This document shows, piece after piece, positions 1 to 59,309 of a stretch of DNA of 64,000 nucleotides. Each line of letters begins with the position of its first letter. The first letter of the stretch is position 1. The translations under genes and the position numbers were made by a program. Under the pieces are notes generated by a model. The model saw only the letters and a program-made list of their open reading frames with translations, did no database searches and had not been told where the DNA came from. Origin of the DNA: Haplodiscus bocki (Eukaryota); the NCBI GenBank assembly GCA_965655095.1, contig OZ296650.1, positions 52,266,001-52,330,000 on the forward strand, given 5' to 3'.

Positions 1-635
1 TTTCACTCAGTGTCCCAATTTCTCAACAACTTCCCAGACTTACTTCTCTTTACTTCTTTAGTTTTCTAGAATGACCGTTGAAACTTGACTGAATTTTTCG
101 TTGACAACTCTCAAGTGCTTTTGAACAATTAAACTCTCCTGAAAGCTGGAAAATATTCTCTTGCAAGTAACAAGTTACAAAGCATCCTACAAGCAAATTT
201 AACCCCAGTTATCTACCCATTGATCCTTGTTGCTTCCATTGAGTGTACGAATTCTTCTATTTTGACCGGTAAGAACACAAATTGTACTACTTTCAATTTA
301 TGTGGTTCAAGTCGGTTGGGTTAATATCTATAAATCAAAGCGGCTTCCTGTCACAAACTAAGTCCAATTTATTCAAACATTAATCAACCATTTAGTCTCT
401 CCACGCTTTTTTTGCTGTACGTTGATCGTTTCTTGCCTCAAACCACTTTCGGAACTGTTTTAGAAACTTCATACTCGTGAATTATCCGGCTGAAACTGTT
501 GCATGATGATTGATTTACAGAATTTCCTTTTATTGAATTGGTTTTAGATTTGCGCCCACATAAGTACAAGTTGTTATTAGGCTGTCTGTTTGTAATTTAG
601 TCAGGTCAATTTTTCATTGTTCTTCCATTGAAACG

Positions 636-905
636 TAATACTCGATTCTGATTGGCTGCCGACAACGTTGCGCAAAAACCAACAGCAGTTTATTTAGATC
701 GGCCGTAATTCGACAATGTACTAAGGCAGTGTATAGCTCAGCAAAGTTTTAATGTTGCGTATACCTCAACAATGTGATAAGATTAAATATAGCTCAGCAA
801 AGTAAAAAAGTTGGGGGATAGCTTAACAATGTAATAAAGCAGGCTTTAGAAAAAGCGTACACTTTCCACTATTGTATTAGGACAGGATACACTTCGGTAA
901 CATAA
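636..905 (-). repeat. Decayed inverted copy of the minisatellite plus CCAAT-motif module found at 3290-3610
   Basis: 641-662 (ctcgattctgattggctgccga) is the exact reverse complement of 3543-3564. 709-840 and 871-905 (gtatagctcagcaaagt, gtatacctcaacaatgtgataag, attgtattaggacaggatacacttcggtaa) are degenerate reverse complements of the 28-bp unit ccgaactataccctatcttaatacatt. Confidence 0.75.
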
Positions 906-2432
906 CTTTGTATGGTATGGATTTGGGTGTCTGAGTCAAAAAATTGAGCTAAGACTGGGCTTTTTTGGCAAAAACTGAGTGTATGAATCCGTCAATGTAT
1001 TAGTAGGTGCAATCCGAGTCGATTTTGTTCCAGTATGTATTCTGATAGCGTGTAGAGCCGCTCGCCTCAACTTTTCGCCCACCTTCCTGCATATACTCTC
1101 CGCTTTTTTTGGCATTCAAATTAGGAGAAGCCGTAAAACACATAAGTTCATCAATTAGTTTTGAGCAAATTGCTAACAGAAGTAAAAAAAGTGGTTGTTC
1201 CGGGTTCCTGTTCTTTGACTTTCAAACGAAGACTCCTGTCACAATCATTTTGTATGCTTGCTTCTACTCAAACTGACTGACTTGTGTAGAAAAACCCAAA
1301 GAAAGCCTGAAAACACAGTTTATCAGTCAACTTTCACAAATTTGTTGTGCTGTCTTACAGCTATGCAGACTATGCAGAGTCTGTTGCTGTGCGTTTAAAC
1401 CATTTTTGTTAGTTGAGTGACTCTTCGACGCAAAATACTGCTTATTGGTCATGCTGTAACGCAAAACTGTGTTTTTGTAGATTTTCAATCAGAAGAAACT
1501 AAAAGCAATTCCCATGAATATTTGATCAGACATGTTAAAGAGACAAAAGTCATGAAAATCCTTATGCCATTTAGAACAAACTTCAACTACAGGGTATTTA
1601 TATCTGACTGTTTGATTGAGATCTGTAACACTAAAACAATCACTTTTGGTTATCAGAACCAATTTTTCTCACAATTGAGCTTCAAGTTACATTTAGCATG
1701 AAAAGCATTTGATTTCCTACTGTGAGTATAGGGACCAGGAGTGATGATGGTAAACATCGGAACAAGAGTTGCGCCGGCGAACATTGCTTCTTCTGGTTCA
1801 AGAAATGCGGCTTTAACAGAACGTTAAATGTTGCAATACACAACATTATCTATAAAATACCATCATTGTACATTGAGCGAAAAAAAACCCAAATTTTTAC
1901 ATTGTTAGACGTCCTTGCTTGAGTCTGAATACATTGCGCGGATCAGAAACAACACTTAATCCCGGATTTTTTAACAAAAGCTATTGATAATACGCTGCAA
2001 ACGTGTGTTGACGTAGCAAGTCAGTACCTGCAGGTGCACAATACAGGCACAGACGTGAAAATTTATCTTTTTTGTAGTCTAAATCAATATAAATGTGCAG
2101 GTTATTTATTGTTTTTGTTTGCATTTGTTCTCTCTAACTAACTTTTTCGACTAAAACATCAATATTTTTACATTGCATTAGGTTAAAATAGTACCCGCAG
2201 GCTCAACAGCAAGTGATTGACAGCTCGTGCAGTTTTTGTTTTCATGGCATAGTCTTCCTTTTATGGCTGGTTTTTCTTTTTGTATTCTTTCCATATAGGG
2301 TTTATTAGGAGACAAGACATGCTACAGATTTTTCGCCATCTTACTTTTTGCGGTTCTACAGTCAAGTTGCTACAGTCTTTACATTTGTTTGAGATTTTCC
2401 TGTTAAATTACTGTTCGGCCGGGGTTACCGGG

Positions 2433-2684
2433 CTATATCCTATCTTAATACTTTGCAAAACTGACTCCTATCTTAATACATTACCAAACTAAACCCTACC
2501 TTGATACATTACCGAACTTCTACCTATCCTAATGCATTACCGAACTATACCCTATCTTAATACATTACCCAACTAAAACCAATCCTAATACTTTACCAAA
2601 CTTTATACTATCTTAATACTTTACTGAACTATAACCAATCCTAATATATTACCAAACTTTACCCTATCTTAATACACTGTCGAA
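2433..2684 (+). repeat. 28-bp minisatellite, 9 tandem copies (consensus ccgaactataccctatcttaatacatta)
   Basis: The core tatcttaata or its variants recurs at 2441, 2469, 2497, 2525, 2553, 2581, 2609, 2637 and 2665, an exact 28-bp period. Further 28-29-bp copies occur at ~2830-2932, ~3295-3500 and ~3615-3730. Confidence 0.95.
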
Positions 2685-3014
2685 GTATCTTTTCACATTG
2701 AATTAAGTCAGAACAGTATCCGCAGGCGTAAAAGTTAACCACATCCGTCGTAATTAGTCCACGCGACGGGGGACCAGGGAAAAATTTCGAAAAAGTCTCA
2801 CAGTGCCGAAAATGAGTCAATCATCCCACTCCCTATCTTTGTACATGGAGCCGAACTATACCCTATCTTAATACATTGCCGAACTGTACGCCATCTTTAT
2901 ATATTGAGCCGAACTATACTCTATTTTAATACTAATTAAGTACGCAAAATACATACCTTTGCAGCTAATCTGAAAGCGACGGAACAATTTTAATTCCCGA
3001 TGCGACGATTACTA

Positions 3015-3095
3015 GCTCCCGTGGCGCCGTGGATGAGACCGCAGGCCGAATTTACTTTTCCATTCCGTCCGCGCAGGTTGGAATCCCCGTAGGAG
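3015..3095 (+). other. tRNA-like / SINE-head-like segment with Pol III A- and B-box matches
   Basis: tggcgccgtgg (3022-3032) is one mismatch from the A box TGGCNNAGTGG. ggttggaatcc (3076-3086) is one mismatch from the B box GGTTCGAATCC. Flanking ctcc/ggag could pair. No convincing full cloverleaf. Confidence 0.35.
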
Positions 3096-3152
3096 ACCTC
3101 ATCCTTTTCGAACCCCCACTTCTGCTCACACTATACTACTTAGGGGAAAACC

Positions 3153-3225
3153 TATCCAGTGGCGTAAAAAAATATACGGCGGCGAAATAATTATCCAGGG
3201 GCGGAATAATCATCCGGGTCGGCGC
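3153..3225 (+). repeat. Short 19-20-bp tandem repeat, about 4 degenerate copies
   Basis: tatccagtggcgtaaaaaaa (3153), tatacggcggcgaaataat (3173), tatccaggggcggaataat (3192), catccgggtcggcg (3211). Confidence 0.65.
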
Positions 3226-6200
3226 GGGTGGACCGAAATCTCGATAAAAAATTTATCGAAAAAATATCACAGTTCGGAAAATTGTCGCACAGTACCGAAA
3301 GTACCTTATTCCGTATCTTAATACATTGCGGGACCATTCCATATCCTTATACGTTACATCATTTTGATACATTGCAGTCCTTTCTTAATATCTTGTTCCA
3401 TACCTTAATACCTTGCCGAAACTATACCCTATCTTAACACATTGCTGAAAATATACCCTATCTTAATACATCGCCGAAACTATACCCTATCTTAATACAT
3501 TAAAAAAGAAAAACCCAAGTTTAACCCAAAACCAACTTCTTTTCGGCAGCCAATCAGAATCGAGCGAAAAAAACCCTAAAACCTCGTCAACCAATCATAA
3601 TCGAGTATCACAGTGCCGAAACATACCCTATCTTAATACATTGCCGAAACATACACGCTCTTAATACATGGGTGGGGGACCTTTCTCGGTTCTGGGCACG
3701 AGTCGGCTGCTATAGCCCATCTTAATACATGGAGGGTCCCCCACCCCCCGTCTGATCAGCTCACAGTCTTACTACTCCGGACTTCTTTCATGCTGAATTT
3801 CATATTTGCTAATCAATTCATACTTGATTTCTTCTATTGGGATCTCAAAACAAATCAATCTACACATTTTTAGGTTTTAAAGTATGATTCAATACAAAAC
3901 TTACTTGTTTTTACGTTCAATGAAATTGCGTATATTCCGAAAGAAACAAATGTGCTGTTTTTTTGCTTAATTCGAACCTCAAAAAGAAATCTGACCGTAG
4001 TTGGCCACTTGGTTCCCATCATGAAGTTTTTGTTCGAAAAACGTTCATACTGTTGGAAGGATTTGGTTGGAGAATGCTTTCTTTCGATCTTTGCTTCAGA
4101 AGTATGGTAGCCCGGAAAATGCCAAAAATTATGGTAATAGAAGAAAAACTCGAAATGGACAATCATACTGGTCCATTACTACAAGTTTGACTTCATTCAT
4201 GAAAGTCTCAATCAAGAATCTCAACTTTGAGAAGGAGAGTTAAGTTGAAACGTCATTCATGTTGATCATTGCTTCAAAATCACGGCAGCCCAATGGATTC
4301 AAAAGTTCTACCAACATCCTTCCTTTCCATTTCTAAACTCGTCTTTTTTCATCACTGCCAGTTTGATTTATTGTAGAAAGGAACCGATCGGGAACTTTAC
4401 CGTTTCGGAAGAGATTTCCGACAAAATTTTGTTCCTTTTGATCGATGAATCAAAATCTCGAAAGTCCAAACATGGAACTGGCTACTAATTTCGATTTAAC
4501 GCGGAACTCAATCTCACATTTCTCAGTAACTACAGGTTTCATTTCCTCCCTGAACAAGTCTGTCGGCAATTCCAGTTGTCAGGGGGACTTTGGACTGCGG
4601 AGTTCTTCCTGGTTGATCCTTGCATGAATTGGCTGACACTGCATAAAATCCAAATTGTGTTGGTTTTTATTATCTATATTGAAGCTCAAACATAACCTTC
4701 CCCAGAAATAAAGGTTCGATTTCTTCGTTGAAAAACTCCATTGGTTTTCTCAATTTTGTATGAGAAGATTCTACTGAAATTCTGTTCATTATGGTCTCTG
4801 TTTCAATAATTTGATTGAATAAAAAATCAAAAAACTGCTTGTAAAGAAAACACTCTCTTGACATTGACAATCATAACAATCCGTCAGTGCAAGCTTGATT
4901 TCTTATATGAAAGTCTCATTGGAAAACTCTATTTGTTATTTTTGTGCTGGCGAATTCGATTGTCAAAGTTTTCACTTTGATCTTTGCATCCACACTGTGC
5001 TCGTCCAATGGATCCAAAACTTCTGTCTGTCAGAATCTTGATTGTTCAATGGAAACAAAACTATTTCTATTTCCGGACTTTCTCCTTGCTGAAAATCTTA
5101 TTTCGTAATTAATTCAGATTTGATTTCTTCTTTTAAGATATCAATACCGTTTTATACTTTTTTAAAGAATAGTAAAATATATAACTTACTTGTTTTTGCT
5201 TTGAAAGAAATTGCGTATACTCCGAAAAAAAAACAAATGTGCTGATTTTATTTGTTTATCTCGAACGTCAAAATGAAATCAGACCGTTGTTGGCCATCTG
5301 GTTTCCACCATGAAATTTTTGTTCAAAAAGTGTTCACATTTTTGGGAGAAATTGTTTGGAGAGTCGCCTTTTTCGATCTTCCCATCAAACGTGTGACTGT
5401 CCGAAAAATCCCAAAAACTATGGTACAAAAGGAACAACTCGAAATAGACAATCATGTTTCTGCATATCTACGAGTTTGACTTCATTCAAGAAAGTCTGAA
5501 TCGAAAATCTCAATTTAGAGAAGGAGCAGAGTTAGAATGAAAATTCATTCATATTGGTCATTGCTCCAACATCTTGGTAGTCCAATGGATTTAACACTTC
5601 AATCAACATCTTTCCTTCCATGTCTAACCTCGACTTTTTTCATTACTGCCAATTTGATTAACTGTATAAAAGAATCAATCGTGTTTTTACCGTTTCGGAA
5701 GACATTTACAACAAATCAGTTCCTTTTGATCGATGAATCAAAATCTCGAAGGTCCAAACGTCCAAGCGAAACTCAATCTCACATTTCTCCGTTACTACAG
5801 GTTTCTTTTCTTTTCTAATCAACTCCATCGGCAACTCCATTTTGGAAAGGGAATTTTGATTTCGGAGTTCATTCAAGTTGATCCTTGTACGAATTGGCTG
5901 ACACTACGAAAAGTCCAACTTGTGTTACATTTTATAGTCTAGCTCGATGCTCAAACCTAACCTTTTCCAAAACTACAGGTTTGATTTCTTCGTTGAGAAA
6001 CTCAATCGGTTTTCCCAAATCTGTATGAGAGGATTCGACTGAAACTCTTTTCAATATGGTCCCTGCTTCAATATTTTGATTCACCCAAAAAACCAAAAAT
6101 TGCTAGTAATGAAAATCTATCTCGACATTGACAGTCATAGTTATCGGTCAGTACAAGCCTAATTTATTGCTTGAAAGTCGCAATGGAAAACTCTAGTTTT

Positions 6201-9200
6201 ATACTGGCGAATTCGATTGTCAAAAAGTTAACTTTGATCCTTGCATTCAATTTTTGATAATCCAAGGGGTCAAAACTTTCTCTCTGTCAAGTTCTTGATT
6301 GTTCAAGGGAGACGAAATTTCTTTTAACTCAAGAACTTATCCTTGGTGAAACCCATATTTCCTAATCGTTTCAGATTTGATTTCTTCTGTTGAGAGCTCA
6401 ATACAAAATTATAATTTTTCACAGAATGATTCAAAAGATAACTACTTGTTTTTACTTTGAATGTAAATGCGTAGACTCCAAAAAAAAACAAATGTGCGTT
6501 TTCAACTTGTTTATCTCGAACCTCAAGAGAAACTCTGACCATAGTTGTCCATCTGGTTTCCACCATAAAGTTTTTGTTCGAAAAGTGTTCATATTTTTGG
6601 AAGGACTTGGTGGGAGATTCCCCTTTTTTGATCTTTGCAAGAGTGACAGACCGGAAAAGCCAAAAAAATATGGTAGAAAAAAAATAACTCGAAATGAACC
6701 ATCACACCTGTACATAACTACAAATTTGACTCCATTCATGAAAGTCTCAATCAAAAATTTCAAGTTTGAAGAGAAGAGTTAGATTAGAAAATCCTTCATG
6801 TTGATCATTGCTCCAAAATCTCGGCAGTACAATGGATTCAAAACTTCTACCAACAGTGTTTCTTTTCCATGTCTTAACTCGACGTTTTTCATTACTGCCA
6901 GTTTGATTAACTGTATAAAGGAATCAATCGTGTTTTTTCCGTTTCGGAAGACATTTACAACGAAGTCAGTTTCTTTTGATCAATGAATCAAAATCTCGAA
7001 GGTCCAAACATGGAAAATGGTTACCTATTTCGATTTACCGCGAAACTCAATCTCACATTTTCCCGTAACTACAAGTTTCAATTTTTCCCTAATCAACTCC
7101 GTCGGCAACTCCATTTTGGAAAGAGAATTTTGATTTCTTCGTTGAGAAACTCAATCGGTTTTTCCCAAATCTGTATGAGAGGGTTCGACTGAAATTCTTT
7201 CCAATATGGTCCCTGCTTCAATATTTTGATTCACCCGAAAAACCAAAAATTGCTAGTAATGAAAAGCTATCTCGACCTTGACAGTCCTAGTTATAGGTCA
7301 GTACAAGCTTGTTTTCCTCTATGAAACTCTCACTGGAAAACTCTAGTTTTGTGCTGGCGAATTCGATTGTTAAAAAGTTAACTTTGATCCTTGCATTCAA
7401 ATTTTGATAGTCCAATGGGTCAGAAGATTCTCTCTGTCAAAAAATCGTTTTTTCAAGAGGAACAAACCTTCATTCAAGTCAAAACTTTCTGCGTGTTGAA
7501 AGTAATATTTCCTAATCAATTCAGATTTGATTCCTTCTACTGAGATCTCAAAACAAATTTTGATTTTGTAACGAAGGATTCAATAGGTAATTTACCTGTT
7601 GTTACTTTGATTGAAATAGCGTATACTCCGAAAAAAAACAAATGTGTTGTTTTTAGTTCTTTATCTCGAATCTCAATATAAAATCTGTCCGTAGTTGGAC
7701 GTTTTGTTTTAACCATGACGTTCCCGCTCGAAAAAAATTGAAACTTTTGGAGGGATTTGTTTGGGAAATCCCCTTTTTTGATCTTTGCATCGGAAGTATG
7801 ACAGTCCGAAAGATGTCAAAAATTATGGTAACAAAGAAATAACTCGAAACGGACAATCATACTTCTCCATAACTACAAGTTTGACTTCATCCATGAAAGT
7901 CTCAATCAAAGATCTCAATTTTGAGGAAGAGAGTTATATTGAAAGTTCATTCAAGTTGATCATTTCTTCAAAATCTCGGCAGTTCAATGGATTTAAATCT
8001 TTTACCTACATCGTTTCTTTTCCATGTCTAAATTCAATCTTTTTCATCATTGCCAGTTTGGTTTACTTTGTAAACGAATCAATCGGGAACTTTAACATTT
8101 TAGAAGAGATTTCCAATAAAATTTCTTTTCTTTTGACCAGTGATTCAAAATCTCGGAAGTCCAAACATGGGACTTGGCTACTCATTCGATATACCTCCAA
8201 AGTCAATCTCCTATTTCTCCATAACTGCAGATTTCATTTCATCCCTAATCAACTCCGACGGCAACTCCACTTTTCACGGGGACTTTGGAGTTCAATCTGG
8301 TTGATCCCTGCATAAATTGGCTGACACTACGAAAAATCGAATGTCTGTTACCTTTTACTATCAATCTCGAAGCCCAAACAAAACCTTCTCCAAAAACATA
8401 GGTTCGATTTCTCCGTTGAAGAACTCAATCTGTTTTCCCATTTTTGTATGAGATGTTTCGACGGAATTTTTCTTCACTATGGTCCCTGCTTCAATATTTT
8501 GATTGATCAAAAAACCAGAAACCGCCTATAATGAATAAAATGTCTCGACATTGACATTCATAAATATGCGTCAGCCCAAGCTTGTTTTCGTCTACTAAAG
8601 TCTAATTGGAAAACTTTAGTTTTGTGCCGCCGAAATCAATTGCCAAATTTTCCCTTTGATCCTAGCATCCAAACTCGAACTTTGATCGTCCACTGCATTA
8701 AAACCTTCTTTCTGTCATGTTCTTGATTGTTCAATGGAAACAAAAAGTCTTTTAATTCAAGAACTTATCTTTGGTGAAACTCATGTTTCCTAATCCATTT
8801 AGGTTTGATTTTCTCTACTGGGATCTCAAAACAAATTTTTGTTTTTGTAAAGAATGATTCAATACAAAAATTGCGTGTTGTTACTTTGATTGAAATAGTG
8901 TATACTCCGAAAAAAGACAAAGGTGCTGTTTTTGATTGTTTATCTCGAATCCCAAAATAAAGTCTGTCCGTAGTTGGACATTTCGTTTCAACCATGAAGT
9001 TTCTGATCGAAGAACTTTGAAATTTTTGGAAGAATTCGTTTCGAAAATCTCCTTTTTTGATTTTTGCATCAGAAGTGTGACAGTCCGAGAAATCTCAAAA
9101 ATTTTGCTAATAAAGAAATAACTCGAAATGGACAGTCATACTTCTACATAATTAAAATTTTGACTCCAACCATGAAAAACTCAATCAAAGATCTCAATTT

Positions 9201-12200
9201 TGAGGAAGAGAGTCAGATTGTAAATTCATTCAAGTTGATCATTGCTTTTTAATCTCGGCAGTCCAACGGACTCAAAACTTCTACCTATATCGTTTCTTTT
9301 CCAGGTCTAAACTCGTCCATTTTCATCACTGCTAGCTTGGTTTATTGTGTAAAGGAATCAATCGGGAACTTTAACATTTTAGAAGAGATTTCCATAAAAT
9401 TTCTTTTGTTTTGACCAGTGATTCAAAATCTCGGAAGTCCAAACATGGAACTTGGCTACTCATTCGCAATACCGCCAAAGTCAATCTCCTATTTCTCCAT
9501 AACTACAGATTTCATTTCTTCCCTAATCAACTCCGACGGCAACTGCACTTGTCAGGGCGAATTTCGACTTTGGAGTTCATTCTGGTTGATGCCTGCACAA
9601 ATTGGCTGACACCACAAAAAATCCAATGTCCGTTATCTTTTACTATCAATCTCGAAGCCCAAACCTAACCTTCCGATAACCGCGAAACTCAATCTCACAT
9701 TTCTGAGTAACTACAGGTTTCAATTATCTCTGATTAACTCTATCGGCAACTCCACTTTTCAAGAGGAATTTGGACCTCGGAGTTCATTCCATTTGATTCT
9801 TGCATGAATTGGTTGAGACCACGAAAAAACCAATATCTGTTTCATTTTATTGTCCATCTCGAAGCCTAAACCTAACCATCTCCAAAAAACAGGTTCGAGT
9901 TTTTCGTTGGAAAACTCAATCAGTTTTATCACCTTTGTATGAGATAATTCGATTGAAACCTTCTTCAATAAGGTCTCTGCTTTAAAATTTTGGTAGGCCG
10001 AAAAATCCAAAAACTGGTTGTATTGAAAAAACTATCTCGACAAGGACAGTCGTTATTATCCGTCATTACAAGCTTGAGTTCTGCTATGAAAGTCTCACCG
10101 AAAATCTCTGCTTTTGTGCTGGTGAATTCGATTGTCAATTTTTTCACTTTGATACTTGCATACAAACTTTGATCTTCCAATGGATCCAAAACTTCTTTCT
10201 TTCAAAGTCTTTGAGTGTTCAATGGAAACAAAACTTCTTTAAGTCAAGAATTTCTCCTTGGTGAAACTCAAATTTCCTAATCAATTCGGATTTTATTTCT
10301 TCTACTGAGATCTTAAAAAAATTACTTTTTTAGGGAAGGATTCAAAAGGTAACCTATTTATTTTTTTTGATTGGATTTTCGTATACTCCGGAAGAAGACA
10401 ACTGTGCCGTTTCTGATTGTTTATCTGGAACCTCGAAAAACATCTGACCTTAGTTGGTCATTTGGTTTCCACCATGAAGTTTTTGTTCGAAAAATGATTA
10501 CCTTTTTTGGAGGATTTGTTTGGAGAATCCCGTTTTTCGATCTTCACATCAAAAAAGTGGCAGTCTGAAAAATCGCAAACATACTAGTAATAGAGGAAGA
10601 ATTCGAAATGGACACCCATACTTGCCCATTTTTACAATTTTGACTTCATTCTCGATAGTTTCATTCAAAGATTTCAATACAGAGGTGCAGAGTTAGATTG
10701 AAAATTCTCTCATTTAGGCCAATGCTCCAAAATCTTGGCAGTCTAATGGATTCGAAACTTCTACCAACATCATTTCTTTTCCATGTCTAAACTCAACTTT
10801 TTTTCATCACTGCTAGGTGGTTTACTGTATAAGGGAATCAGTCGGGAACTTTAACGTTTTAGATGAAGTTTCCAACAAAATATCGTTTTTTTGATCCATG
10901 AATGAAAATCTCGAAAGTCCAAGCTCGGAACTTGGCTATGTAATTCCATTTACCACGAAACTCAATCTCACATTTTTCAGTTACTACAGGTTTCATTTCA
11001 GACCTAATCAACTCTGTCGGCAATTCCACTTTTCAAGGAGAAGTTTGATTTCGGAGTACGTTCAGGCTGATCCTTGCATGAATTGGCTGACAATACAGAA
11101 AATCCATCATATGTTATATTTTATTATCTATCTCGATGCCGAAATCTAACCTCCTCCAAAACTACAGGTTTCATTCCTTCGTTGAAAAACTCAATCTGCC
11201 TTCCCACCTTTGTTTGAGATGATTCGATTGAAATCTTCGTCAATATGGTCTCTGCTTTAAAATTTTGATTGGCCGAAAAATCCAAAAACTGCTTGTATTG
11301 AAGAAACTATCTCGACAATGACAATCGTTTATATCCGTCATTACAAGCTTGAGTTCTTCTATCGAAGTCTCACTGGAAAATTCTAGTTTTGTGCCGGTGA
11401 AGTCGATTGTCAAAATTTCCGATTTGATCTTTGCATCCAAACTTTGTTCGTCCAATGGACCCAATCGACATAATTAATGAACATTTCAAAATGGACAACC
11501 GTACTTGTACGTTACTACAAGTTTGACTTCATCCATGAAAGTCTCAAACAAAGATCTCAATTTTGAGGAGGAGAGTCAGATTGAAAAACCTTTCAAGTTG
11601 ATCATTGCTCCAAAATCTCGGCGGTCCAATAGATTCAAAACTTCTACCATCATCTTTTCTTTTCCGTGTCTGAACTCGTCTTTTTTCGTCATTGCCAGTT
11701 TGATTTACTGTGTAACGGAATTAATCGGGATCTTTAATGCTTTAGAAGAGATTTGCAACAAAAATCCGTTTTTTCAATCATTGAATAGAAATTTCCAAAA
11801 TCCAAACATGGAACTTGGCTAAATCTTTCGATTTACCTCGAAATTAAATCCCACATTCATCCATAACTACAAGTTCCTTTTCTCCCCTAATCAACTCCGT
11901 CGGCCACTCCACTTTTCAAAGTGAATTTTGAATATCGGAGATCTTTCAGGTTGATCCTTGCTTGAATTGACTGACTCAACGGAAAATCCAACCTTTGTTA
12001 CCTTTTAAGGTCTATCTCGCAGCCCAAACATAACCTTCTCCAAAACTCCAGGTTTGATTTCTTCATTCAAAAACTCAATCGGTTTTCCCAATTTTGTATG
12101 AGATGATTTGATTGAAATCCTCTTCAATATGGTCTCTGCTTTGAAATTTTGATTGGCCGAAAAATCCAAAAACTGCTTGTATTGATAAAACTATCTTGTC

Positions 12201-14099
12201 AATGACAATCGTTATTATCCGTCAGTACAAGCTTGATTTCTTCTATGAAAGTTTCACTGGAAAACTCGGCTTTTGTGCTGGTGAAGTCGGTTGTCAAGTT
12301 TTCCACTTTGATCCCTGCATCCAAATTTTGATCTTCCAATGGATCCAAAACTTCTCTTTGTCAAAGTCTTTGATTTTTCAATGGAAACAAAACTTCTTTT
12401 GATTCCAGAATTTCTCCCTGGTAAAACTCAAATTTCCTAATCAATTGGGATTTGATTTCTTCTATTGACATCTTAAAACAATTTATACTTTTTCAGAGAA
12501 AGATTCAATAGGTAACCTGTTTATTATTTTTGATTGAATTTTCGTATACTCCGGAAGAAGACAAATGTGCCGTTTCTAATTGTTTATCGGGAACCTCAAA
12601 ATAAAATCTGACCATAGTTGGCTATCAGGTTTCCGCCATGAATATCTTGTTCGAAAAATGATTACCTTTTTCGGAGGAATTGATTGGAGAATCCCCTTTT
12701 TCGATCTTGACATCGAAGGTGTGGCAGTCTGAAAAGTCCCAAATATTATCGTATTTATTGAATATTTCAAAATGGACAATCATACTTGTCCACATCTACA
12801 CTTTTGACTTCCTTCATGAAAGTCTCAATCAAATATCTCAATTTAGACGAGCAGAGTTAGATTGAAAACCCATCCATGTTGGTCATTGCTCCAAAATCTT
12901 GGCAGTCCAATGGATTCAAAACTTCTACCAACATCATTTCTTTTCCATGTCTAAACTCAACTTTTTTCATCACTGCTAATTGGCTTACCGTATAAGGGAA
13001 TCAGTGGGGAAGTTTAGCGTTTTAGAAGAAATTTGCAACAAAATATCGTTTCTTTTGATCAATGAATGGAACCCTCGAAAGTCCAAACATGGAACTTGGC
13101 TAATTAATTCGATTTACCTCGAAACTCAATCTCACCTTCCTACGTAACTACATGTTTCTTTTCATACCTAATCAACTCTGTCGGCAATTCCACTTTTCAA
13201 AGAGAATATTGATTTCGGAGTTCATTCAGGTTGATCCTTGCATGAATTGGCTGACACTACGAAAAATCCAACATGTGTTACTTTTTTTATGTATCTCGTT
13301 GCCCAGACCTAACCTTCTCCAAATTTACATGTCTGATTTCTCCGTTGAAAAACTCAATCGATTATCATACTTTTTTATGAGAGGATTCGACTGAAATTTT
13401 CTTCAATATGGTCCCTGGGTCATTATTTTGGTTGACCAAAAAATTCGAAATCTGATTGTAATGAAAAAAAGTTTCTGGACCTTGACAATCGTAATTTTCC
13501 GTAATCAAAAGATTGGTTTCTCCTATGAAAGTCCCACTGGATAACTTTGCTTTTGTGTCGGCGAATTCGATTGTCAAGTTTTTAACTCCGATCCTTGCAT
13601 CCAAACTTTGATCTTCCAATGGATCCAAAACTTCTTTCTGTCAAACTTTTTGATTGTTCGTTGGAAACAAAACTTCTTTTAATTCCGGAATTTCTCCCTG
13701 ATGAAGCTCATAATTCCTATTCAAATCGGAGTTGATTTCTTCTATTGAGATCTCAACACAAATTACGTTTTTTAGAGAAGGATTCAAAAGATAGCTTACC
13801 TGATTTTACTTTGATTGAAATTGCGTAGACTCCGAAAAAAAAATGTGCTGATTTTAATTGTTTATCTCGAAACTCAGAATAAAACGTGACGGTAGTTGGC
13901 CATTTAGTTTCCACCATGAAAATTTTGTTCAAAAAATGTCCGATTTTTTGGCTTGATTTTTTTGGAGAATCCCCTTTTCCGAGCTTTGCTTCAAAAGTGT
14001 GACAGTCCGGAAAATCCCAAAAATATTAGTAAGATAGGAATAACTCAAAATGGACAAACCTACTTGTCCGTTACTACAAGTTTGACTTCATTCATGAAT

Positions 14100-17000
14100 G
14101 TCATAAACAAAGATCTCAATTTAGAGGAGCAGAGTTAGATTGAAAATTCATTCATGTTGGTCATCGCTCCAAAATCTAGGCAGTCCAATGGATTCAAAAA
14201 TTCCACCAACAATGTTTCTTTTCTATGTCTAAACTCGTCTTTTTTCATTACTGCCAGTTTGATTTACTGTATAAAGGAATCAATCGGGAATTCAATCGTT
14301 TCAGAAGCCATTTACAACAAAGTCGATTTATTTTGGTCATTGAATCAAAATCTCAAAAGTCTAAGCATGGAACTTGGCTACGTATTTCCATTTACCACGA
14401 AACTCAACCTCACATTTCTCCGTTACTACAGGTTTGATTTCATACCTAAGCAACTCTGTCGGCAATTCTACTTTTCAAGGAGAAGTTTGATTTCGGAGTT
14501 CGTTCAGGCTGGTCCTTGCATGAATTGTCTGACAATACGGATAATCCATCATATGTTATATTTTTTTATGTATCTCGATGCCCCAACCTAACCTCCTCCA
14601 AAAGTACAGGTTTCATTCCTTCGTTGAAAAACTCAATCTGTTTTCCCATTTCTGTTTGAGGGGGTTCGACTGAAATTCTCCTTAATATGGTCCCTGCTTC
14701 AATGTTTTGATTGACCAAAAAAATGCTTGTAATGAGAGAAATCTCTAAACTTTGACAACAACATTTATTCGTCAGAACAAGCTTGATTTCGTCTACGAAA
14801 GTCTCACCGGAAAACTCTAGTTTTGTGCCGCTGAAGTCGCCTGTCAAAGTTTCCGATTTGATCTTTGCATCGAAACTTTGTTCGTCCAATGGATCGAAAA
14901 CTTCTGTTTGTCAAAACTAGGATTGTTCAATGGAAACAAAACTTCTTTTAATTCCGGACTTTCTCCTTTCTGGAGTTCGTATTTACTAATCAATTCAGAT
15001 TTGATTTTCTCTAGTGAGATCCCATCACGAATTCGTACTTATTCAAAAACTTCTTCAACAGGTAACTTACTTGTTTTTACTTTGGATGAGCTTGCGTAGA
15101 CTCCGAAAAAAAAACAAATGTGCTGAATTTAATTGTTTATATCGAACCTCGGAATGAGATCTGACCGTAGTTGGCCACTTGGTTTCCACCATGAAAATTT
15201 TGTTCAAAAAAACGTTCATTTTTTTGGCTTGATTTTTTTGGAGAATCTTCTTTCTCGAACTTTGCTTCGAAAGTGTGACAGTCCGAAAAATCCCAAAGAT
15301 ATTAGTAAAGAAGGAATAACTCGAAATGGACAACCATAATTGTCCGTTACTACAAGTTTGACTTCATTCATGAATGTCATAAACAAAGATCTCAATTTAG
15401 AGGAGCAGATTTAGATTGAGAATTCATTCACGTTGGTCATTGCTCCAAAATCTCGGCAGTCCAATGGATTCAAAAATTCCACCAACAATGTTTCTTTTCT
15501 ATGTCTAAACTCGTCTTTTTTCATTACTGCCAGTTTGATTTACTGTATAAAGGAATCAATCGGGAATTCTATCGTTTCAGAAGCCATTTACAACAAAGTC
15601 GATTTATTTTGGTCATTGAATCAAAATCTCAAAAGTCTAAGCATGGAACTTGGCTACGTATTTCCATTTACCACGAAACTCAACCTCACATTTCTCCGTT
15701 ACTACAGGTTTGATTTCATACTTAAGCAACTCTGTCGGCAATTCTACTTTTCAAGGAGAAGTTTGATTTCGGAGTTCGTTCAGGCTGGTCCTTGCATGAA
15801 TTGTCTGACAATACGGATAATCCATCATATGTTATATTTTTTTATGTATCTCGATGCCCCAACCTAACCTCCTCCAAAAGTACAGGTTTCATTCCTTCGT
15901 TGAAAAACTCAATCTGTTTTCCCATTTCTGTTTGAGGGGGTTCGACTGAAATTCTCCTTAATATGGTCCCTGCTTCAATGTTTTGATTGACCAAAAAAAT
16001 GCTTGTAATGAGAGAAATCTCTAAACTTTGACAACAACATTTATTCGTCAGAACAAGCTTGATTTCGTCTACGAAAGTCTCATCGGAAAACTCTAGTTTT
16101 GTGCCGCTGAAGTCGCCTGTCAAAGTTTCCGATTTGATCTTTGCATCGAAACTTTGTTCGTCCAATGGATCGAAAACTTCTGTTTGTCAAAACTAGGATT
16201 GTTCAATGGAAACAAAACTTCTTTTAATTCCGGACTTTCTCCTTTCTGGAGTTCGTATTTACTAATCAATTCAGATTTGATTTTCTCTAGTGAGATCCCA
16301 TCACGAATTCGTACTTATTCAAAAACTTCTTCAACAGGTAACTTACTTGTTTTTACTTTGGATGAGCTTGCGTAGACTCCGAAAAAAAACAAATGTGCTG
16401 AATTTAATTGTTTATATCGAACCTCGGAATGAGATCTGACCGTAGTTGGCCACTTGGTTTCCACCATGAAAATTTTGTTCAAAAAAATGTTCATTTTTTT
16501 GGCTTGATTTTTTTGGAGAATCTCCTTTCTCGAACTTTGCTTCAAAAGTGTGACAGTCCGAAAAATCCCAAAGATATTAGTAAAGAAGGAATAACTCGAA
16601 ATGGACAACCATAATTGTCCGTTACTACAAGTTTGACTTCATTCATGAATGTCATAAACAAAGATCTCAATTTAGAGGAGCAGATTTAGATTGAGAATTC
16701 ATTCACGTTGGTCATTGCTCCAAAATCTCGGCAGTCCAATGGATTCAAAAATTCCACCAACAATGTTTCTTTTCTATGTCTAAACTCGTCTTTTTTCATT
16801 ACTGCCAGTTTGATTTACTGTATAAAGGAATCAATCGGGAATTCTATCGTTTCAGAAGCCATTTACAACAAAGTCGATTTATTTTGGTCACTGAATCAAA
16901 ATCTCAAAAGTCTAAGCATGGAACTTGGCTACGTATTTCCATTTACCACGAAACTCAATCTCACATTTCTCCGTTACTACAGGTTTGATTTCATACCTAA
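14100..17000 (+). repeat. Recent tandem amplification of one unit variant (~2.3 near-identical copies, period 1275-1276)
   Basis: ORF pairs 14566/15842, 14878/16154 and 15433/16708 are nearly identical at offsets of 1275-1276. Confidence 0.9.
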
Positions 17001-17127
17001 TCAACTCTGTTGGCAATTCCACTTTTCAAGGAGAAGTTTGATTTCGGAGTACGTTCAGGCTGATCCTTGCATAAATTGGCTGACAATACAGAAAATCCAT
17101 CATATGTTATATTTTATTATCTATCTC

Positions 17128-20100
17128 GAGGAACAAACCTTCATTCAAGTCAAAACTTTCTCCGTGTTGAAAGTAATATTTCCTAAACAATTCAGATTTG
17201 ATTTCTTCTACTGAGATCTCAAAACAAATTTCGATTTTGTAACGAAGGATTCAATAGGTAATTTACCTGTTGTTACTTTGATTGAAATAGCGTATACTCC
17301 GAAAAAAAAGAAATGTGTTGTTTTTAGTTCTTTATCTCGAATCTCAATATAAAATCTGTCCGTAGTTGGACGTTTTGTTTTAACCATGACGTTCCCGCTC
17401 GAAAAAAATTGAAACTTTTGGAGGGATTTGTTTGGGAAATCCCCTTTTTTGATCTTTGCATCGGAAGTATGACAGTCCGAAAGATGTCAAAAATTATGGT
17501 AACAAAGAAATAACTCGAAACGGACAATCATACTTCTCCATAACTACAAGTTTGACTTCATCCATGAAAGTCTCAATCAAAGATCTCAATTTTGAGGAAG
17601 AGAGTTAGATTAAAAGTTCATTCAAGTTGATCATTTCTTCAAAATCTCGGCAGTTCAATGGATTTAAATCTTTTACCTACATCGTTTCTTTTCCATGTCT
17701 AAATTCAATCTTTTTCATCATTGCCAGTTTGGTTTACTTTGTAAACGAATCAATCGGGAACTTTAACATTTTAGAAGAGATTTCCAATAAAATTTCTTTT
17801 CTTTTGACCAGTGATTCAAAATCTCGGAAGTCCAAACATGGAACTTGGCTACTCATTCGCAATACCGCCAAAGTCAATCTCCTATTTCTCCATAACTACA
17901 GATTTCATTTCTTCCCTAATCAACTCCGACGGCAACTGCACTTGTCAGGGCGAATTTCGACTTTGGAGTTCATTCTGGTTGATGCCTGCACAAATTGGCT
18001 GACACCACAAAAAATCCAATGTCCGTTATCTTTTACTATCAATCTCGAAGCCCAAACCTAACCTTCCGTTTGCCGCGAAACTCAATCTCACATTTCTGAG
18101 TAACTACAGGTTTCAATTCTCTCTGATTAACTCTATCGGCAACTCCACTTTTCAAGAGGAATTTGGACCTCGGAGTTCATTCCGTTTGATTCTTGCATGA
18201 ATTGGTTGAGACCACGAAAAAACCAATATCTGTTTCATTTTATTGTCCATCTCGAAGCCTAAAACTAACCATCTCCAAAAAACAGGTTCGAGTTTTTCGT
18301 TGGAAAACTCAATCAGTTTTATCACCTTTGTATGAGATAATTCGATTGAAACCTTCTTCAATATGGTCTCTGCTTTAAAATTTTGGTAGGCCGAAAAATC
18401 CAAAAACTGGTTGTATTGAAAAAACTATCTCGACAAGGACAGTCGTTATTATCCGTCATTACAAGCTTGAGTTCTGCTATGAAAGTCTCACTGAAATTCT
18501 CTGCTTTTGTGCTGGTGAATTCGATTGTCAATTTTTTCACTTTGATACTTGCATACAAACTTTGATCTTCCAATGGATCCAAAACTTCTTTCTTTCAAAG
18601 TCTTTGAGTGTTCAATGGAAACAAAACTTCTTTTAAGTCAAGAATTTCTCCTTGGTGAAAATCAAATTTCCTAATCAATTCGGATTTTATTTCTTCTATT
18701 GAGATCTTAAAAAAATTACTTTTTTAGGGAAGGATTCAAAAGGTAACCTATTTATTTTTTTTGATTGGATTTTCGTATATACCGGAAGAAGACAACTGTG
18801 CCGTTTCTGATTGTTTATCTGGAACCTCGAAAAAAATCTGACCTTAGTTGGTCATTTGGTTTCCACCATGAAGTTTTCGTTCGAAAAATGATTACCTTTT
18901 TTGGAGGATTTGTTTGGAGAATCCAGTTTTTCGATCTTCACATCAAAAAAGTGGCAGTCTGAAAAATCGCAAACATACTAGTAATAGAGGAAGAATTCGA
19001 AATGGACACCCATACTTGCCCATTTTTACAATTTTGACTTCATTCTCGATAGTTTCATTCAAAGATTTCAATACAGAGGTGCAGAGTTAGATTGAAAATT
19101 CTCTCATTTAGGCCAATGCTCCAAAATCTTGGCAGTCTAATGGATTCGAAACTTCTACCAACATCATTTCTTTTCCATGTCTAAACTCAACTTTTTTTCA
19201 TCACTGCTAGGTGGTTTACTGTATAAGGGAATCAGTCGGGAACTTTAACGTTTTAGATGAAGTTTCCAACAAAATATCGTTTTTTTGATCCATGAATGAA
19301 AATCTCGAAAGTCCAAGCTCGGAACTTGGCTATGTAATTCCATTTACCACGAAACTCAATCTCACATTTTTCAGTTACTACAGGTTTCATTTCAGACCTA
19401 ATCAACTCTGTCGGCAATTCCACTTTTCAAGGAGAAGTTTGATTTCGGAGTACGTTCAGGCTGATCCTTGCATGAATTGGCTGACAATACAGAAAATCCA
19501 TCATATGTTATATTTTATTATCTATCTCGATGCCGAAATCTAACCTCCTCCAAAACTACAGGTTTCATTCCTTCGTTGAAAAACTCAATCTGCCTTCCCA
19601 CCTTTGTTTGAGATGATTCGATTGAAATCTTCGTCAATATGGTCTCTGCTTTAAAATTTTGATTGGCCGAAAAATCCAAAAACTGCTTGTATTGAAAAAA
19701 CTATCTCGACAATGACAATCGTTTATATCCGTCATTACAAGCTTGAGTTCTTCTATCGAAGTCTCACTGGAAAATTCTAGTTTTGTGCCGGTGAAGTCGA
19801 TTGTCAAAATTTCCGATTTGATCTTTGCATCCAAACTTTGTTCGTCCAATGGACCCAATCGACATAATTAATGAACATTTCAAAATGGACAACCGTACTT
19901 GTACGTTACTACAAGTTTGACTTCATCCATGAAAGTCTCAAACAAAGATCTCAATTTTGAGGAGGAGAGTCAGATTGAAAAACCTTTCAAGTTGATCATT
20001 GCTCCAAAATCTCGGCGGTCCAATAGATTCAAAACTTCTACCATCATCTTTTCTTTTCCGTGTCTGAACTCGTCTTTTTTCGTCATTGCCAGTTTGATTT

Positions 20101-22240
20101 ACTGTGTAACGGAATTAATCGGGATCTTTAATGCTTTAGAAGAGATTTGCAACAAAAATCCGTTTTTTCAATCATTGAATAGAAATTTCCAAAATCCAAA
20201 CATGGAACTTGGCTAAATCTTTCGATTTACCTCGAAATTAAATCCCACATTCATCCATAACTACAAGTTCCTTTTCTCCCCTAATCAACTCCGTCGGCCA
20301 CTCCACTTTTCAAAGTGAATTTTGAATATCGGAGATCTTTCAGGTTGATCCTTGCTTGAATTGACTGACTCAACGGAAAATCCAACCTTTGTTACCTTTT
20401 AAGGTCTATCTCGCAGCCCAAACATAACCTTCTCCAAAACTCCAGGTTTGATTTCTTCATTCAAAAACTCAATCGGTTTTCCCAATTTTGTATGAGATGA
20501 TTTGATTGAAATCCTCTTCAATATGGTCTCTGCTTTGAAATTTTGATTGGCCGAAAAATCCAAAAACTGCTTGTATTGATAAAACTATCTTGTCAATGAC
20601 AATCGTTATTATCCGTCAGTACAAGCTTGATTTCTTCTATGAAAGTTTCACTGGAAAACTCGGCTTTTGTGCTGGTGAAGTCGGTTGTCAAGTTTTCCAC
20701 TTTGATCCCTGCATCCAAATTTTGATCTTCCAATGGATCCAAAACTTCTCTTTGTCAAAGTCTTTGATTTTTCAATGGAAACAAAACTTCTTTTGATTCC
20801 AGAATCTCTCCCTGGTGAAACTCAAATTTCCTAATCAATTGGGATTTGATTTCTTCTATTGACATCTTAAAACAATTTATACTTTTTCAGAGAAAGATTC
20901 AAAAGGTAACCTGTTTATTATTTTTGATTGAATTTTCGTATACTCCGGAAGAAGACAAATGTGCCGTTTCTAATTGTTTATCTGGAACCTCAAAATAAAA
21001 TCTGACCATAGTTGGCTATCAGGTTTCCGCCATGAATATCTTGTTCGAAAAATGATTACCTTTTTCGGAGGAATTGATTGGAGAATCCCCTTTTTCGATC
21101 TTGACATCGAAGGTGTGGCAGTCTGAAAAGTCCCAAATATTATCGTATTTATTGAATATTTCAAAATGGACAATCATACTTGTCCACATCTACACTTTTG
21201 ACTTCATTCATGAAAGTCTCAATCAAATATCTCAATTTAGACGAGCAGAGTTAGATTGAAAACCCATCCATGTTGGTCATTGCTCCAAAATCTTGGCAGT
21301 CCAATGGATTCAAAACTTCTACCAACATCATTTCTTTTCCATGTCTAAACTCAACTTTTTTCATCACTGCTAATTGGCTTACCGTATAAGGGAATCAGTG
21401 GGGAAGTTTAGCGTTTTAGAAGAAATTTGCAACAAAATATCGTTTCTTTTGATCAATGAATGGAACTCTCGAAAGTCCAAACATGGAACTTGGCTAATTA
21501 ATTCGATTTACCTCGAAACTCAATCTCACCTTCCTACGTAACTACATGTTTCTTTTCATACCTAATCAACTCTGTCGGCAATTCCACTTTTCAAAGAGAA
21601 TATTGATTTCGGAGTTCATTCAGGTTGATCCTTGCATGAATTGGCTGACACTACGAAAAATCCAACATGTGTTACTTTTTTTATGTATCTCGTTGCCCAG
21701 ACCTAACCTTCTCCAAATTTACATGTCTGATTTCTCCGTTGAAAAACTCAATCGATTATCATACTTTTTTATGAGAGGATTCGACTGAAATTTTCTTCAA
21801 TATGGTCCCTGGGTCATTATTTTGGTTGACCAAAAAATTCGAAATCTGATTGTAATGAAAAAAAGTTTCTGGACCTTGACAATCGTAATTTTCCGTAATC
21901 AAAAGATTGATTTCTCCTATGAAAGTCCCACTGGATAACTTTGCCTTTGTGCCGGCGAATTCGATTGTCAAGTTTTTAACTTCGATCCTTGCATCCAAAC
22001 TTTGATCTTCCAATGGATCCAAAACTTCTTTCTGTCAAACTTTTTGTTTGTTCGTTGGAAACAAAACTTCTTTTAATTCCAGAATTTCTCCCTGATGAAG
22101 CTCATAATTCCTATTAAAATCGGAATTGATTTCTTCTATTGAGATCTCAATACAAATTACGTTTTTTGGAGAAGGATTCAAAAGATAGCTTACCTGATTT
22201 TACTTTGATTGAAATTGCGTAGACTCCGAAAAAAAACAAA
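17128..22240 (+). repeat. Segmental copy of 7457-~13850 lacking exactly one unit
   Basis: The first part is offset by 9671 (ORFs 7653/17324) and the rest by 8393-8394 (9418/17811, 10898/19292, 13365/21759). The difference of 1278 is one unit. Confidence 0.9.
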
Positions 22241-22280
22241 TGTGCTGAATTTAATTGTTTATATCGAACCTCGGAATGAA

Positions 22281-35500: not shown

Positions 35501-35829
35501 TCTAAACTCGATTTTTTTCAATACTGCCAGTTTGATTTACTGTATAAAGGATTCAATCGGGAATTCTATCGTTTCAGAAGACATTTACAACAAAGTCGAT
35601 TTCTTTTGGTCAATGAATAAAAATCTCGAAAGTTAAAACATGGAATTTGGCTACGTATTCCCAATTACCGCGGAACTCAATCTCACATTTCTCAGTAACT
35701 ACAGGTTTCATTTCTCTCTAATTAACTCTGTGGGCAACTCCACTTTTTAAGGGTAATTTGGACTTCGGAGTTCATTCTGGTTGATCCTTGCATGAATTGG
35801 CTGACACTACGAAATATCCAATGTCTGCT

Positions 35830-37743: not shown

Positions 37744-37745
37744 TG

Positions 37746-54200: not shown

Positions 54201-54227
54201 TTTCTATTCCATGTTTAAACTCGTCTT

Positions 54228-58600: not shown

Positions 58601-59309
58601 TGTCAAAGTCACGATTGTTCAACGGAAACAACACTTCGTTTAAATCCGGACATTCTGCTTGCTGAAACTCTTATTTCCTAATCAGTTCAGATCTGATTTC
58701 TTCTATTGAGAGCTCAATACGGAATCAAACTTTGTTGAAGAATGATTCAGAAGATATCTAAATGTTTTTACTTTGAATGAAATTGCGTAGACTCCCAAAA
58801 AAAAAACAAAAAGGCCGGTTCTAATTGTTTATCTCGGACCGCAAAATAAAAATTGACCGTAGTTTGACATTTGGTTTCAGCCATGAAGTTTCTGCTCGAG
58901 AAATTTTGGACAGATTTGTTTAGAGTATCCTCTTTTACGATCTTTGCCTCAAGAGTGTGACAGTCCGAAAAATCCCAAAATTTATGGTAATAAAGTAATA
59001 ACTCGGAATGGACAAACATACTTGCCCATAACCACAAGTATGGCTTCAATCATGAAAGTCTCAATCAAATATCTCAAATTTGAGCAGCAGAGTTAGATTA
59101 GATTTTTTTTCATGTTAACCATTGCTTCAAAATCTCGGCAGTCCAATGGATTCTAAACTTCTACCAACAACGTTTCTTTTCCTTGTCTAAATTCGTCTTT
59201 TTTCATCACTGCTTGTTGGTTTTTTGTATAAAGGAATCAATCGGGAGTTTTACCGTTTTAGAAGAGAATGCCAATAAAAATTATTTTCTGTTGATCAATA
59301 AAAAAAATC

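What the first reader, a model, noticed from the sequence alone, without database searches (positions are those of the whole stretch)
3950..5320. The 1.28-kb unit hides seven ~177-bp monomers
Seen: a shared core (approximately a(g/c)(g/t)tttgatttc..c.atgaaa) recurs at ~4010 (A), 4185 (B), 4360 (C), 4535 (D), 4713 (E), 4893 (F), 5118 (G) and 5298 (next A). Spacings are about 175, 175, 175, 178, 180, 225 and 180 bp. Monomers within a unit differ far more from each other than the same monomer differs between units. This is the higher-order-repeat organisation known from primate alpha satellite, though the sequence is unrelated.
Basis: seen in the sequence. Interest (0 to 1): 0.7.

Follow-up and report, generated by a model that had tools for sequence, protein, structure and literature searches.

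The report
Seven-monomer higher-order satellite repeat, confirmed
The 1.28-kb repeat filling this window is non-coding satellite DNA, and each unit is built from seven old, strongly diverged copies of a ~177-bp piece; this layout is well known from centromere-type repeats, and nothing here shows a centromere.

Summary
Window 3822-62910 holds 323 head-to-tail ~177-bp monomers, about 46 units of 1.28 kb, all on one strand.

- **Periodicity:** the unit consensus autocorrelates at 178 bp (z 7.8), 352, 530 (z 8.1) and 709 bp.
- **Order:** 96% of transitions follow A>B>C>D>E>F>G>A.
- **Identity:** same-slot monomers are 77% alike and different slots 48% (chance 27%). Five slots are clades with support of at least 0.99.

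So it is a higher-order repeat, but an old one, because the 1.28-kb copies are only about 77% alike. A third, young level lies on top: a 3,437-bp block of 19 monomers occurs three times at 99.8-100% identity, and other multi-unit duplications are present.

The array is one block of a satellite domain of at least 310 kb on a 135-Mb contig. Neighbouring blocks have other periods (2.1, 1.54 and 1.22-1.24 kb). A 27-bp core of the monomer occurs about 1,800 times genome-wide, on every large contig listed and on both strands. It also occurs in an unrelated public metagenome contig.

I found no sign of coding, hairpins or a CENP-B box, and no evidence of centromere function. The scan has already found the same kind of hidden repeat on other pieces of this genome. 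It is a new member of a known kind.

The parts
3822..62910 (+). Heptamer array: 323 monomers of ~177 bp, about 46 units of ~1.28 kb, slot order A-B-C-D-E-F-G
   Evidence: 96% of transitions are canonical. BLAST similarity to the end of the unit starts at 3776.
4008..4180 (+).
   Evidence: profile hit E 1e-20; slot assignment
4182..4356 (+). Monomer B. Carries the best copy of the 27-bp core in this unit, at 4186-4212.
4358..4531 (+). Monomer C
4533..4708 (+). Monomer D
4712..4887 (+). Monomer E
4889..5104 (+). Monomer F, 218 bp. About 40 bp (profile positions 95-129) are duplicated inside it, which explains the 225-bp spacing.
   Evidence: hits 4889-5024 at profile 1-129 and 5031-5104 at profile 95-169
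5115..5287 (+). Monomer G
22292..32602 (+). Third level: a 3,437-bp block of 19 monomers (ABCDEFG-ABCDEF/BCDEFG) in three tandem copies, 100% and 99.77% identical
   Evidence: (lag 3437)
8739..24576 (+). 8.39-kb intra-array duplication (8739-16171 against 17132-24576), 92% overall, with many monomers 99-100% alike
43656..48778 (+). Two-unit (2.56-kb) repeat in two copies, 93% overall, with same-slot monomers up to 98-99% alike
11344..11515 (+). F/A hybrid monomer at the ABCDEF|BCDEFG junction. It keeps the 177-bp register (174 bp to the next monomer start). The same junction recurs at 19738, 24459, 27896 and 31333, carried by the level-3 duplications.
62962..64000 (+). Degenerate tail: monomers of the same family with no fixed slot order. 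It continues about 5 kb past the window end.
1..3775 (.). Non-satellite interruption, about 8 kb together with the DNA upstream of the window. It separates this array from the upstream 2.1-kb array and holds 28-30-bp minisatellites at 2433-3669.

Best explanation
This is non-coding satellite DNA with three nested levels of repetition.

1. A ~177-bp monomer family, about the length of one nucleosome plus linker, whose copies have drifted to about 48% identity.
2. A block of seven such monomers (1.28 kb) that was amplified long ago into about 46 copies. These now stand at about 77% identity.
3. Recent re-amplification of multi-unit blocks (3.44 kb three times at 99.8-100%, plus 8.4-kb and 2.56-kb duplications).

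The inferred mechanism is the usual one for satellites: unequal exchange and gene conversion between misaligned repeats, partly in monomer register, together with segmental duplication inside the array.

The array is one block of a co-oriented satellite domain of at least 310 kb, in which each block has its own higher-order period. The monomer family is spread over the whole genome. No sequence-specific function is shown. The most likely role is structural or none: heterochromatin-type repeat DNA. The 27-bp core is the only part under visible conservation.
For: The structure is shown directly.

- **Periodicity and tiling:**
- **Slot order:**
- **Slot clades and the 77% against 48% identities:**
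- **Third level:**. In all, 70% of monomers have a same-slot partner at 95% or more.
- **Variant junctions:**. Fourteen junctions, about eight independent events; the F>B event, present in five of its six copies, keeps the 177-bp register.

The array is non-coding.

- No ORF exceeds 222 aa, and stops occur in all frames.
- There is no period-3 signal in the variability between units (rank 280 of 636) or in family-wide conservation (rank 53 of 87).
- Pfam and Rfam give nothing.
- The word-based protein search gives nothing.

The domain context is as follows.

- The monomer profile covers contig C3 from 52.126 to 52.335 Mb, all on the + strand.
- Block periods there are 2100, 1542 and 1730 bp.
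- The 2.1-kb 12-mer block is 87-99% homogeneous over about 14 copies.
- More arrays of 1216-1242 bp lie at 52.39-52.44 Mb.

The family is genome-wide.

- The core occurs 1776 times at up to 3 mismatches, against 0 for the reversed control.
- 83 near-exact copies lie on C1-C11 and two small contigs, 42 forward and 41 reverse.
Against: - The mechanism (unequal exchange, conversion) is inferred from the pattern and not observed.
The 100%-identical 3.44-kb copies could therefore be partly an assembly effect.
- Columns conserved between slots are also more conserved within slots (Spearman 0.31, p 2e-5). The 27-bp core is identical at nine unlinked loci and also occurs in a public metagenome contig whose only scored match in this genome is 71% alike. 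Purely neutral repeat DNA would not obviously keep that.
Confidence: 0.9

Rival explanations
1. It is the functional centromere satellite, or its inner pericentromere, of this chromosome. Nucleosome-length monomers would carry centromeric histone, and the higher-order repeats would be produced by recombination at the kinetochore region.
For: - The monomer is nucleosome-length and organised in regimented higher-order repeats.
- The domain is layered and co-oriented. A more homogeneous 12-mer block (87-99%) is flanked by older blocks and by a slot-less tail.
- The domain is interrupted by non-satellite inserts.
- It lies at 39% of a 135-Mb contig.
- A 2026 atlas of 325 species finds that such repeats are typical of satellite centromeres (10.64898/2026.09.17.752431).
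Against: - The family is not confined to one locus per chromosome. Near-exact cores, including clustered arrays, lie at many places on the same contig, for example C2 at 90.8, 104.8 and 130.4 Mb and C3 at 118.6 Mb.
- The domain seen is only about 0.3 Mb.
- There is no CENP-B box core and no excess of dyad symmetry (mean z 0.00).
- No chromatin data are available.
Confidence: 0.12
2. The ~177-bp unit is carried by, or derived from, a mobile element with internal tandem repeats. That element seeds short arrays all over the genome, and this locus is one seed that expanded into a large satellite.
For: - An identical 27-mer sits at nine unlinked sites on eight contigs.
- 83 near-exact copies occur in both orientations, most of them single hits megabases apart.
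- The BLAST first look found 2463 candidates genome-wide.
- Short isolated clusters of 1-5 monomers lie outside the main arrays, at C3 52.107-52.110 Mb.
- Earlier scan notes describe transposon-born satellites in this genome (s1-382623, s1-381246; unchecked).
- Dispersed satellite families linked to transposons are reviewed in PMC10048060.
Against: - I saw no transposon hallmark: there are no large ORFs in the 8-kb interruption beside the array.
'Single' hits may simply be old arrays in which one slot still matches.
Confidence: 0.3
3. The monomer is a relic of a protein-coding repeat of 59 codons (177 bp), so the array is a decayed tandem gene or gene fragment.
For: - 177 bp is 3 x 59 and the unit consensus is 1281 bp, 3 x 427.
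- On the minus strand the core reads as an open frame (I-E-T-L-M-E-E-I-K).
- The most variable core position among dispersed copies is the third base of the Thr codon in that frame. My count: 22 of 63 independent single-mismatch loci, with all three alternative bases seen.
- A 164-aa open stretch at 63062-63553 (-) shows the same ~59-aa motif three times.
Against: - Stops occur in all six frames at close to the random rate.
- There is no period-3 signal in unit variability or in family conservation.
- Without that single hypervariable site, the mismatches fall evenly on codon positions (15, 16 and 10).
- Pfam gives no hit and the word-based protein search gives none.
- The other two frames carry stops inside the core itself, so the open-frame comparison is biased.
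Confidence: 0.04
4. The ~177-bp sub-period is a chance or composition effect in an AT-rich 1.28-kb unit.
For: Between-slot identity is low (48%), and TRF reports nothing.
Against: - Autocorrelation z is 7.8-8.1, above every one of 200 shuffles.
- All 21 slot pairs score 3-13 sd above shuffled controls.
- A profile from seven sequences recovers 339 in-phase hits, and also about 650 more in flanking DNA.
Confidence: 0.01

Closest known systems
Primate alpha-satellite higher-order repeats
   Same: Head-to-tail monomers of about one nucleosome length. Fixed cyclic order of distinct monomer types. Same-slot monomers cluster across copies. Variant units arise by deletion or duplication of whole monomers. 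A layered domain with different repeat lengths side by side, and a slot-less degenerate flank.
   Different: The higher-order copies are only about 77% alike (alpha: about 95-100%), and slots differ by about 52% (alpha: roughly 20-40%). The homogeneous level here is one step higher, at 3.44 kb. There is no CENP-B box core. Centromere function is not shown. The family lies at many sites per chromosome. Sequence relatedness was not tested.
Regular and complex higher-order repeats in non-primates, such as Tribolium castaneum (PMC5737470), and the regimented repeats found across eukaryotes (bioRxiv 10.64898/2026.09.17.752431)
   Same: Regimented multi-monomer periodicity in an invertebrate-type genome. 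Monomers lie in the 100-200 bp class.
   Different: This family is deeply diverged, so standard tandem-repeat finders report only the kilobase unit or nothing. I found no paper describing it.
Dispersed satellite families with euchromatic short arrays, such as TCAST in Tribolium (review PMC10048060; PMC5844308)
   Same: One monomer family is present both as long arrays and at many scattered sites on all chromosomes, in both orientations.
   Different: I could not examine whether the scattered sites here are solo monomers, short arrays or transposon-borne copies.
Other hidden higher-order repeats noted by this scan in the same genome (s1-381258, s1-359302, s1-354055, s1-381257, s1-354061)
   Same: Kilobase units built of 8-10 old monomers of ~167-180 bp. 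Core hits with spacings of 1377, 1522 and 1563 bp on C1, C4 and C8 fit such arrays.
   Different: This one has seven slots and a 1.28-kb unit. Homology between those arrays and this one was inferred only from the shared 27-bp core, not from their sequences.

Membership tests
Higher-order-repeat (HOR) satellite | Head-to-tail monomers of one sequence family | tested here: met
   339 in-phase profile hits, all on the + strand, modal spacing 175-179 bp. The seven consensus monomers align throughout. Pair scores lie 3-13 sd above shuffles.
Higher-order-repeat (HOR) satellite | Distinct monomer types in a fixed cyclic order | tested here: met
   Class string ABCDEFG; 308 of 322 transitions are canonical. 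Median best-slot score is 123 against 27 for the second-best slot.
Higher-order-repeat (HOR) satellite | Same-position monomers of different units are closer to each other than to their neighbours | tested here: met
   77% against 48% median identity. Slots B, D, E, F and G are monophyletic with support 0.99-1.0. A and C are broken only by tail monomers.
Higher-order-repeat (HOR) satellite | Higher-order copies nearly identical (about 95% or more), showing ongoing homogenisation | tested here: not met
   Not met at the 1.28-kb level: adjacent units are about 80% alike and units overall 77%. It is met one level up: the 3,437-bp block occurs three times at 99.8-100%, and 70% of monomers have a same-slot partner at 95% or more.
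Alpha satellite (the primate family itself) | Sequence homology to the ~171-bp alpha monomer | not tested
No human sequence was obtained.
Alpha satellite (the primate family itself) | CENP-B box in a subset of monomers | tested here: not met
   The core motif TTCGNNNNANNCGGG has 0 matches in 64 kb. The motif was recalled from memory.
Centromeric satellite | Bound by the centromeric histone / site of the kinetochore | not testable with these tools
   No chromatin data.
Centromeric satellite | One principal locus per chromosome | tested here: inconclusive
   Core hits lie at many sites per contig, including several clustered arrays on C2. Array sizes elsewhere are unknown, so a principal locus cannot be ruled in or out.
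Transposon-derived satellite | Monomer homologous to part of a mobile element, or arrays bounded by element ends | tested here: inconclusive
   The dispersed, two-strand distribution of near-identical cores fits this. No element was seen, and the sites could not be read.

The most novel reading that the evidence does not exclude
The ~177-bp monomer family is an old, genome-wide 'alpha-like' satellite superfamily of this animal lineage. Its 27-bp core (TTTGATTTCTTCCATSAARGTCTCAAT) would be kept by selection as a protein-binding or recombination box, or because it belongs to a still-mobile element that seeds new arrays. The core is identical at unlinked loci and is also found in another sample's DNA.
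Probability: 0.2. Interest if true: 0.55.

Novelty: new member of a known kind. Interest (0 to 1): 0.3.

Why it matters
It shows that kilobase 'macrosatellites' in this genome are fossil higher-order repeats of a nucleosome-length monomer, stacked in three levels. One monomer family underlies arrays on many chromosomes. That gives a monomer profile and a 27-bp core with which every array in the genome can be mapped, and with which candidate centromeres can be tested against chromatin data. Higher-order repeats of this kind are now known to be common across eukaryotes, so the finding by itself is ordinary.

Tried and rejected
- **TRF:** it does not report the array, because the 1.28-kb unit exceeds its longest period of 500 bp and the ~177-bp monomers are too diverged.
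- **BLAST with the unit consensus:** it suggested no related DNA downstream of the window. That was wrong. The monomer profile finds further arrays at 52.376-52.44 Mb.
- **Coding origin:** rejected as far as testable. The open-frame excess around the core is biased, because the other frames have stops inside the core.
- **Hairpin or dyad-symmetry enrichment:** none. The mean z of 56 monomers against dinucleotide shuffles is 0.00.
- **CENP-B box:** none.
- **Rfam:** none.
- **Slot orthology with the downstream 1.22-1.24-kb arrays:** none. Best slot 56% against second-best 54%.
  - The genome-wide search with monomer model R1 failed three times.
I did not use padded patterns to read them.
- **Organism:** not established. 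Earlier notes call it a coral. Flanking ORFs gave only one Pfam hit, a viral-glycoprotein-like fragment.
- **Literature:** searches for coral or cnidarian satellites with higher-order repeats found nothing specific.

Full report
**What is there.** The window is AT-rich (GC about 35%) with a steady strand asymmetry. TRF does not report the array. The window is G000:C3:52266001-52330000 on a 135.2-Mb contig of a 1.5-Gb assembly.

**The ~177-bp sub-period is real.**
- The raw window autocorrelates at 178, 352, 530, 707, 882, 1102 and 1279 bp.
- On a 1281-bp consensus of 24 full units, the circular autocorrelation reaches z 7.8 at 178, 4.3 at 352, 8.1 at 530 and 5.8 at 572 (which is 1281-709). This is above the maximum of 200 shuffles.
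They align along their whole length, with shared boxes.
- All 21 pairs score 3-13 sd above shuffled controls.
- A profile made from these seven sequences finds 339 hits, all on the + strand, with modal spacing 175-179 bp.
- F is long because about 40 bp are duplicated inside it.

**It is a higher-order repeat.**
- Assigning each monomer to its best consensus gives the string ABCDEFG repeated. Of 322 transitions, 308 are canonical.
- Median identity is 77% within a slot and 48% between slots, with chance at 27%. In a tree of 317 monomers, slots B, D, E, F and G are clades with support 0.99-1.0.
- Jukes-Cantor distances are about 0.90 between slots and 0.27 between units. The heptamer was therefore amplified long after the monomers had diverged.
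- The closest slot pairs are B-F and A-E, with C-G fifth of 21. The hypothesis was formed on the same data, so I count it only as suggestive.

**It is old at the 1.28-kb level and young one level up.**
- Full units are only 75-81% alike unless they belong to a recent duplication. Adjacent same-slot monomers are about 80% alike.
- Yet 70% of monomers have a same-slot partner at 95% or more, at preferred lags of 8.39, 3.44, 1.28, 2.56 and 6.87 kb.
- A 3,437-bp block of 19 monomers stands three times at 22292-32602, with 100% and 99.77% identity.
- An 8.39-kb duplication is 92% alike. A two-unit repeat at 43656-48778 is 93% alike. Units 36442-37702 and 48788-50047 are 99.2% alike.
- Fourteen non-canonical junctions reduce to about eight events. 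The F>B junction, present in five of its six copies, keeps the 177-bp register through an F/A hybrid monomer; the others leave partial monomers.
- This pattern is what unequal exchange and segmental duplication inside an array produce. That mechanism is inferred, not observed.

**It is not coding and has no special fold.**
- The longest ORF is 222 aa, and stops occur in all six frames near the random rate.
- Variability between units has no period-3 signal (rank 280 of 636). Neither has conservation across 425 non-redundant monomers of the family (rank 53 of 87).
- Pfam, Rfam and the word-based protein search gave nothing.
- Single-strand DNA folding of 56 monomers is no more stable than for dinucleotide shuffles (mean z 0.00).
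- CpG is not depleted (observed/expected 0.9).
- The CENP-B box core is absent.

**Surroundings.**
- The monomer profile covers C3 from 52.126 to 52.335 Mb on the + strand. Non-satellite interruptions lie at 52.136-52.152 Mb and at about 52.2617-52.2698 Mb; the second includes window 1-3775.
- The upstream blocks have their own periods of 2100, 1542 and 1730 bp, always on the 177-bp base.
- The 2.1-kb block is a 12-mer that shares recognisable C, D, G, A, B and F types with the heptamer. It is 87-99% homogeneous over about 14 copies at 52.2177-52.2471 Mb.
- The right end of the heptamer array decays into a slot-less tail.
- About 41 kb of other DNA follows. Then the family resumes at 52.376-52.44 Mb, with periods of 1216, 1238 and 1242 bp. 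The slots there are not orthologous to A-G (best 56% against 54%).
- The domain is therefore at least 310 kb. I could not read its right limit, nor the unread 10-kb stretches between the sampled pieces downstream of the window.

**Genome-wide family.**
- The slot-majority core TTTGATTTCTTCNATGAAAGTCTCAAT occurs 1776 times in the genome at up to 3 mismatches. The reversed control gives 0. The window holds only 31 of these hits, all in slots B and F.
- The commonest variant has 83 copies at up to 1 mismatch, on C1-C11 and two small contigs, 42 forward and 41 reverse.
- Nine exact copies lie on eight contigs.
- Some hits are clustered at higher-order spacings: about 1377 bp on C1, 1278 on C2, 1522 on C4 and 1563 on C8. 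Most are single.
- This weakens the centromere reading and raises a transposon-carrier reading. I could not read those sites.
- A JGI metagenome contig, Ga0126343_10199126, consists of about eight tandem monomers of the family in a three-monomer repeat. Of 2463 first-look candidates for it in this genome, only one was scored, at 71% identity. The family therefore probably exists in another organism or sample.

**Comparison with what is known.** Higher-order repeats are no longer a primate speciality. An atlas of 325 species reports regimented and heterogeneous higher-order repeats as common in plants and animals, with monomers enriched at 100-200 bp (10.64898/2026.09.17.752431). Regular ones are described in Tribolium (PMC5737470). 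Dispersed satellite families are reviewed in PMC10048060. I found no description of this family or of coral satellites of this type. Earlier notes of this scan report the same kind of hidden repeat on other pieces of this genome.

No read-level or expression check was made, and I tried no other route. I met no human-like contig and needed no spliced model. The organism was not identified here.

**Verdict.** It is a new member of a known kind and of moderate to low interest. The open lead is the conserved, genome-wide 27-bp core.

Noticed in passing
window 2433-3669: Several short arrays of a 28-30-bp minisatellite (consensus near CTTAATACATTGCCGAAACTATACCCTAT) lie in the non-satellite stretch just left of the heptamer array. 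I found no ORF of 90 aa or more with a family match in this interruption.
   Followed up: partly
L010:5674-6372 (-), = C3:52355674-52356372: A 233-aa open stretch matches Pfam PF24664, the Monjiviricetes fusion glycoprotein (E 2e-10). It looks like a fragment of an endogenous viral or retroelement envelope gene in the 41-kb non-satellite gap right of the array. I only observed it.
   Followed up: no
C3:52217700-52247100 (L025, L016, L024, L015): The upstream 2.1-kb, 12-monomer repeat is the most homogeneous block of the domain (87-99% between copies). It shares slot types C, D, G, A, B and F with the heptamer.
   Followed up: partly
L012-L014 (C3:52390001-52440000, sampled): Further arrays of the same monomer family have periods of 1216, 1238 and 1242 bp, again about seven monomers. 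Their slots are not orthologous to A-G. The unit-level BLAST missed them.
   Followed up: partly
L044 (JGI metagenome contig Ga0126343_10199126, 1413 bp): The whole contig is about eight tandem monomers of this family in a three-monomer repeat (same-slot identity 72-78%). It carries the exact 27-bp core. Its only scored match in this genome is 71% alike.
   Followed up: partly
genome-wide core hits: Among near-exact core copies, one position (base 19 of the 27-mer) carries all four bases and accounts for 22 of 63 independent single-mismatch loci. This is either subfamily structure or a hypervariable site. It is the third base of a codon in the open minus-strand frame, but no other coding signal exists.
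   Followed up: partly
window 63062-63553 (-): A 164-aa stop-free stretch in the degenerate tail shows a ~59-aa motif three times (…E-x-F-[IM]-E-E-[IK]-x-P…). There is no Pfam hit and no protein relative by word search. It is probably the monomer periodicity read as protein.
   Followed up: yes
C3:52122147 (200 N): An assembly gap lies about 4 kb left of the first large block of the satellite domain, so the left part of the domain may be incomplete.
   Followed up: no
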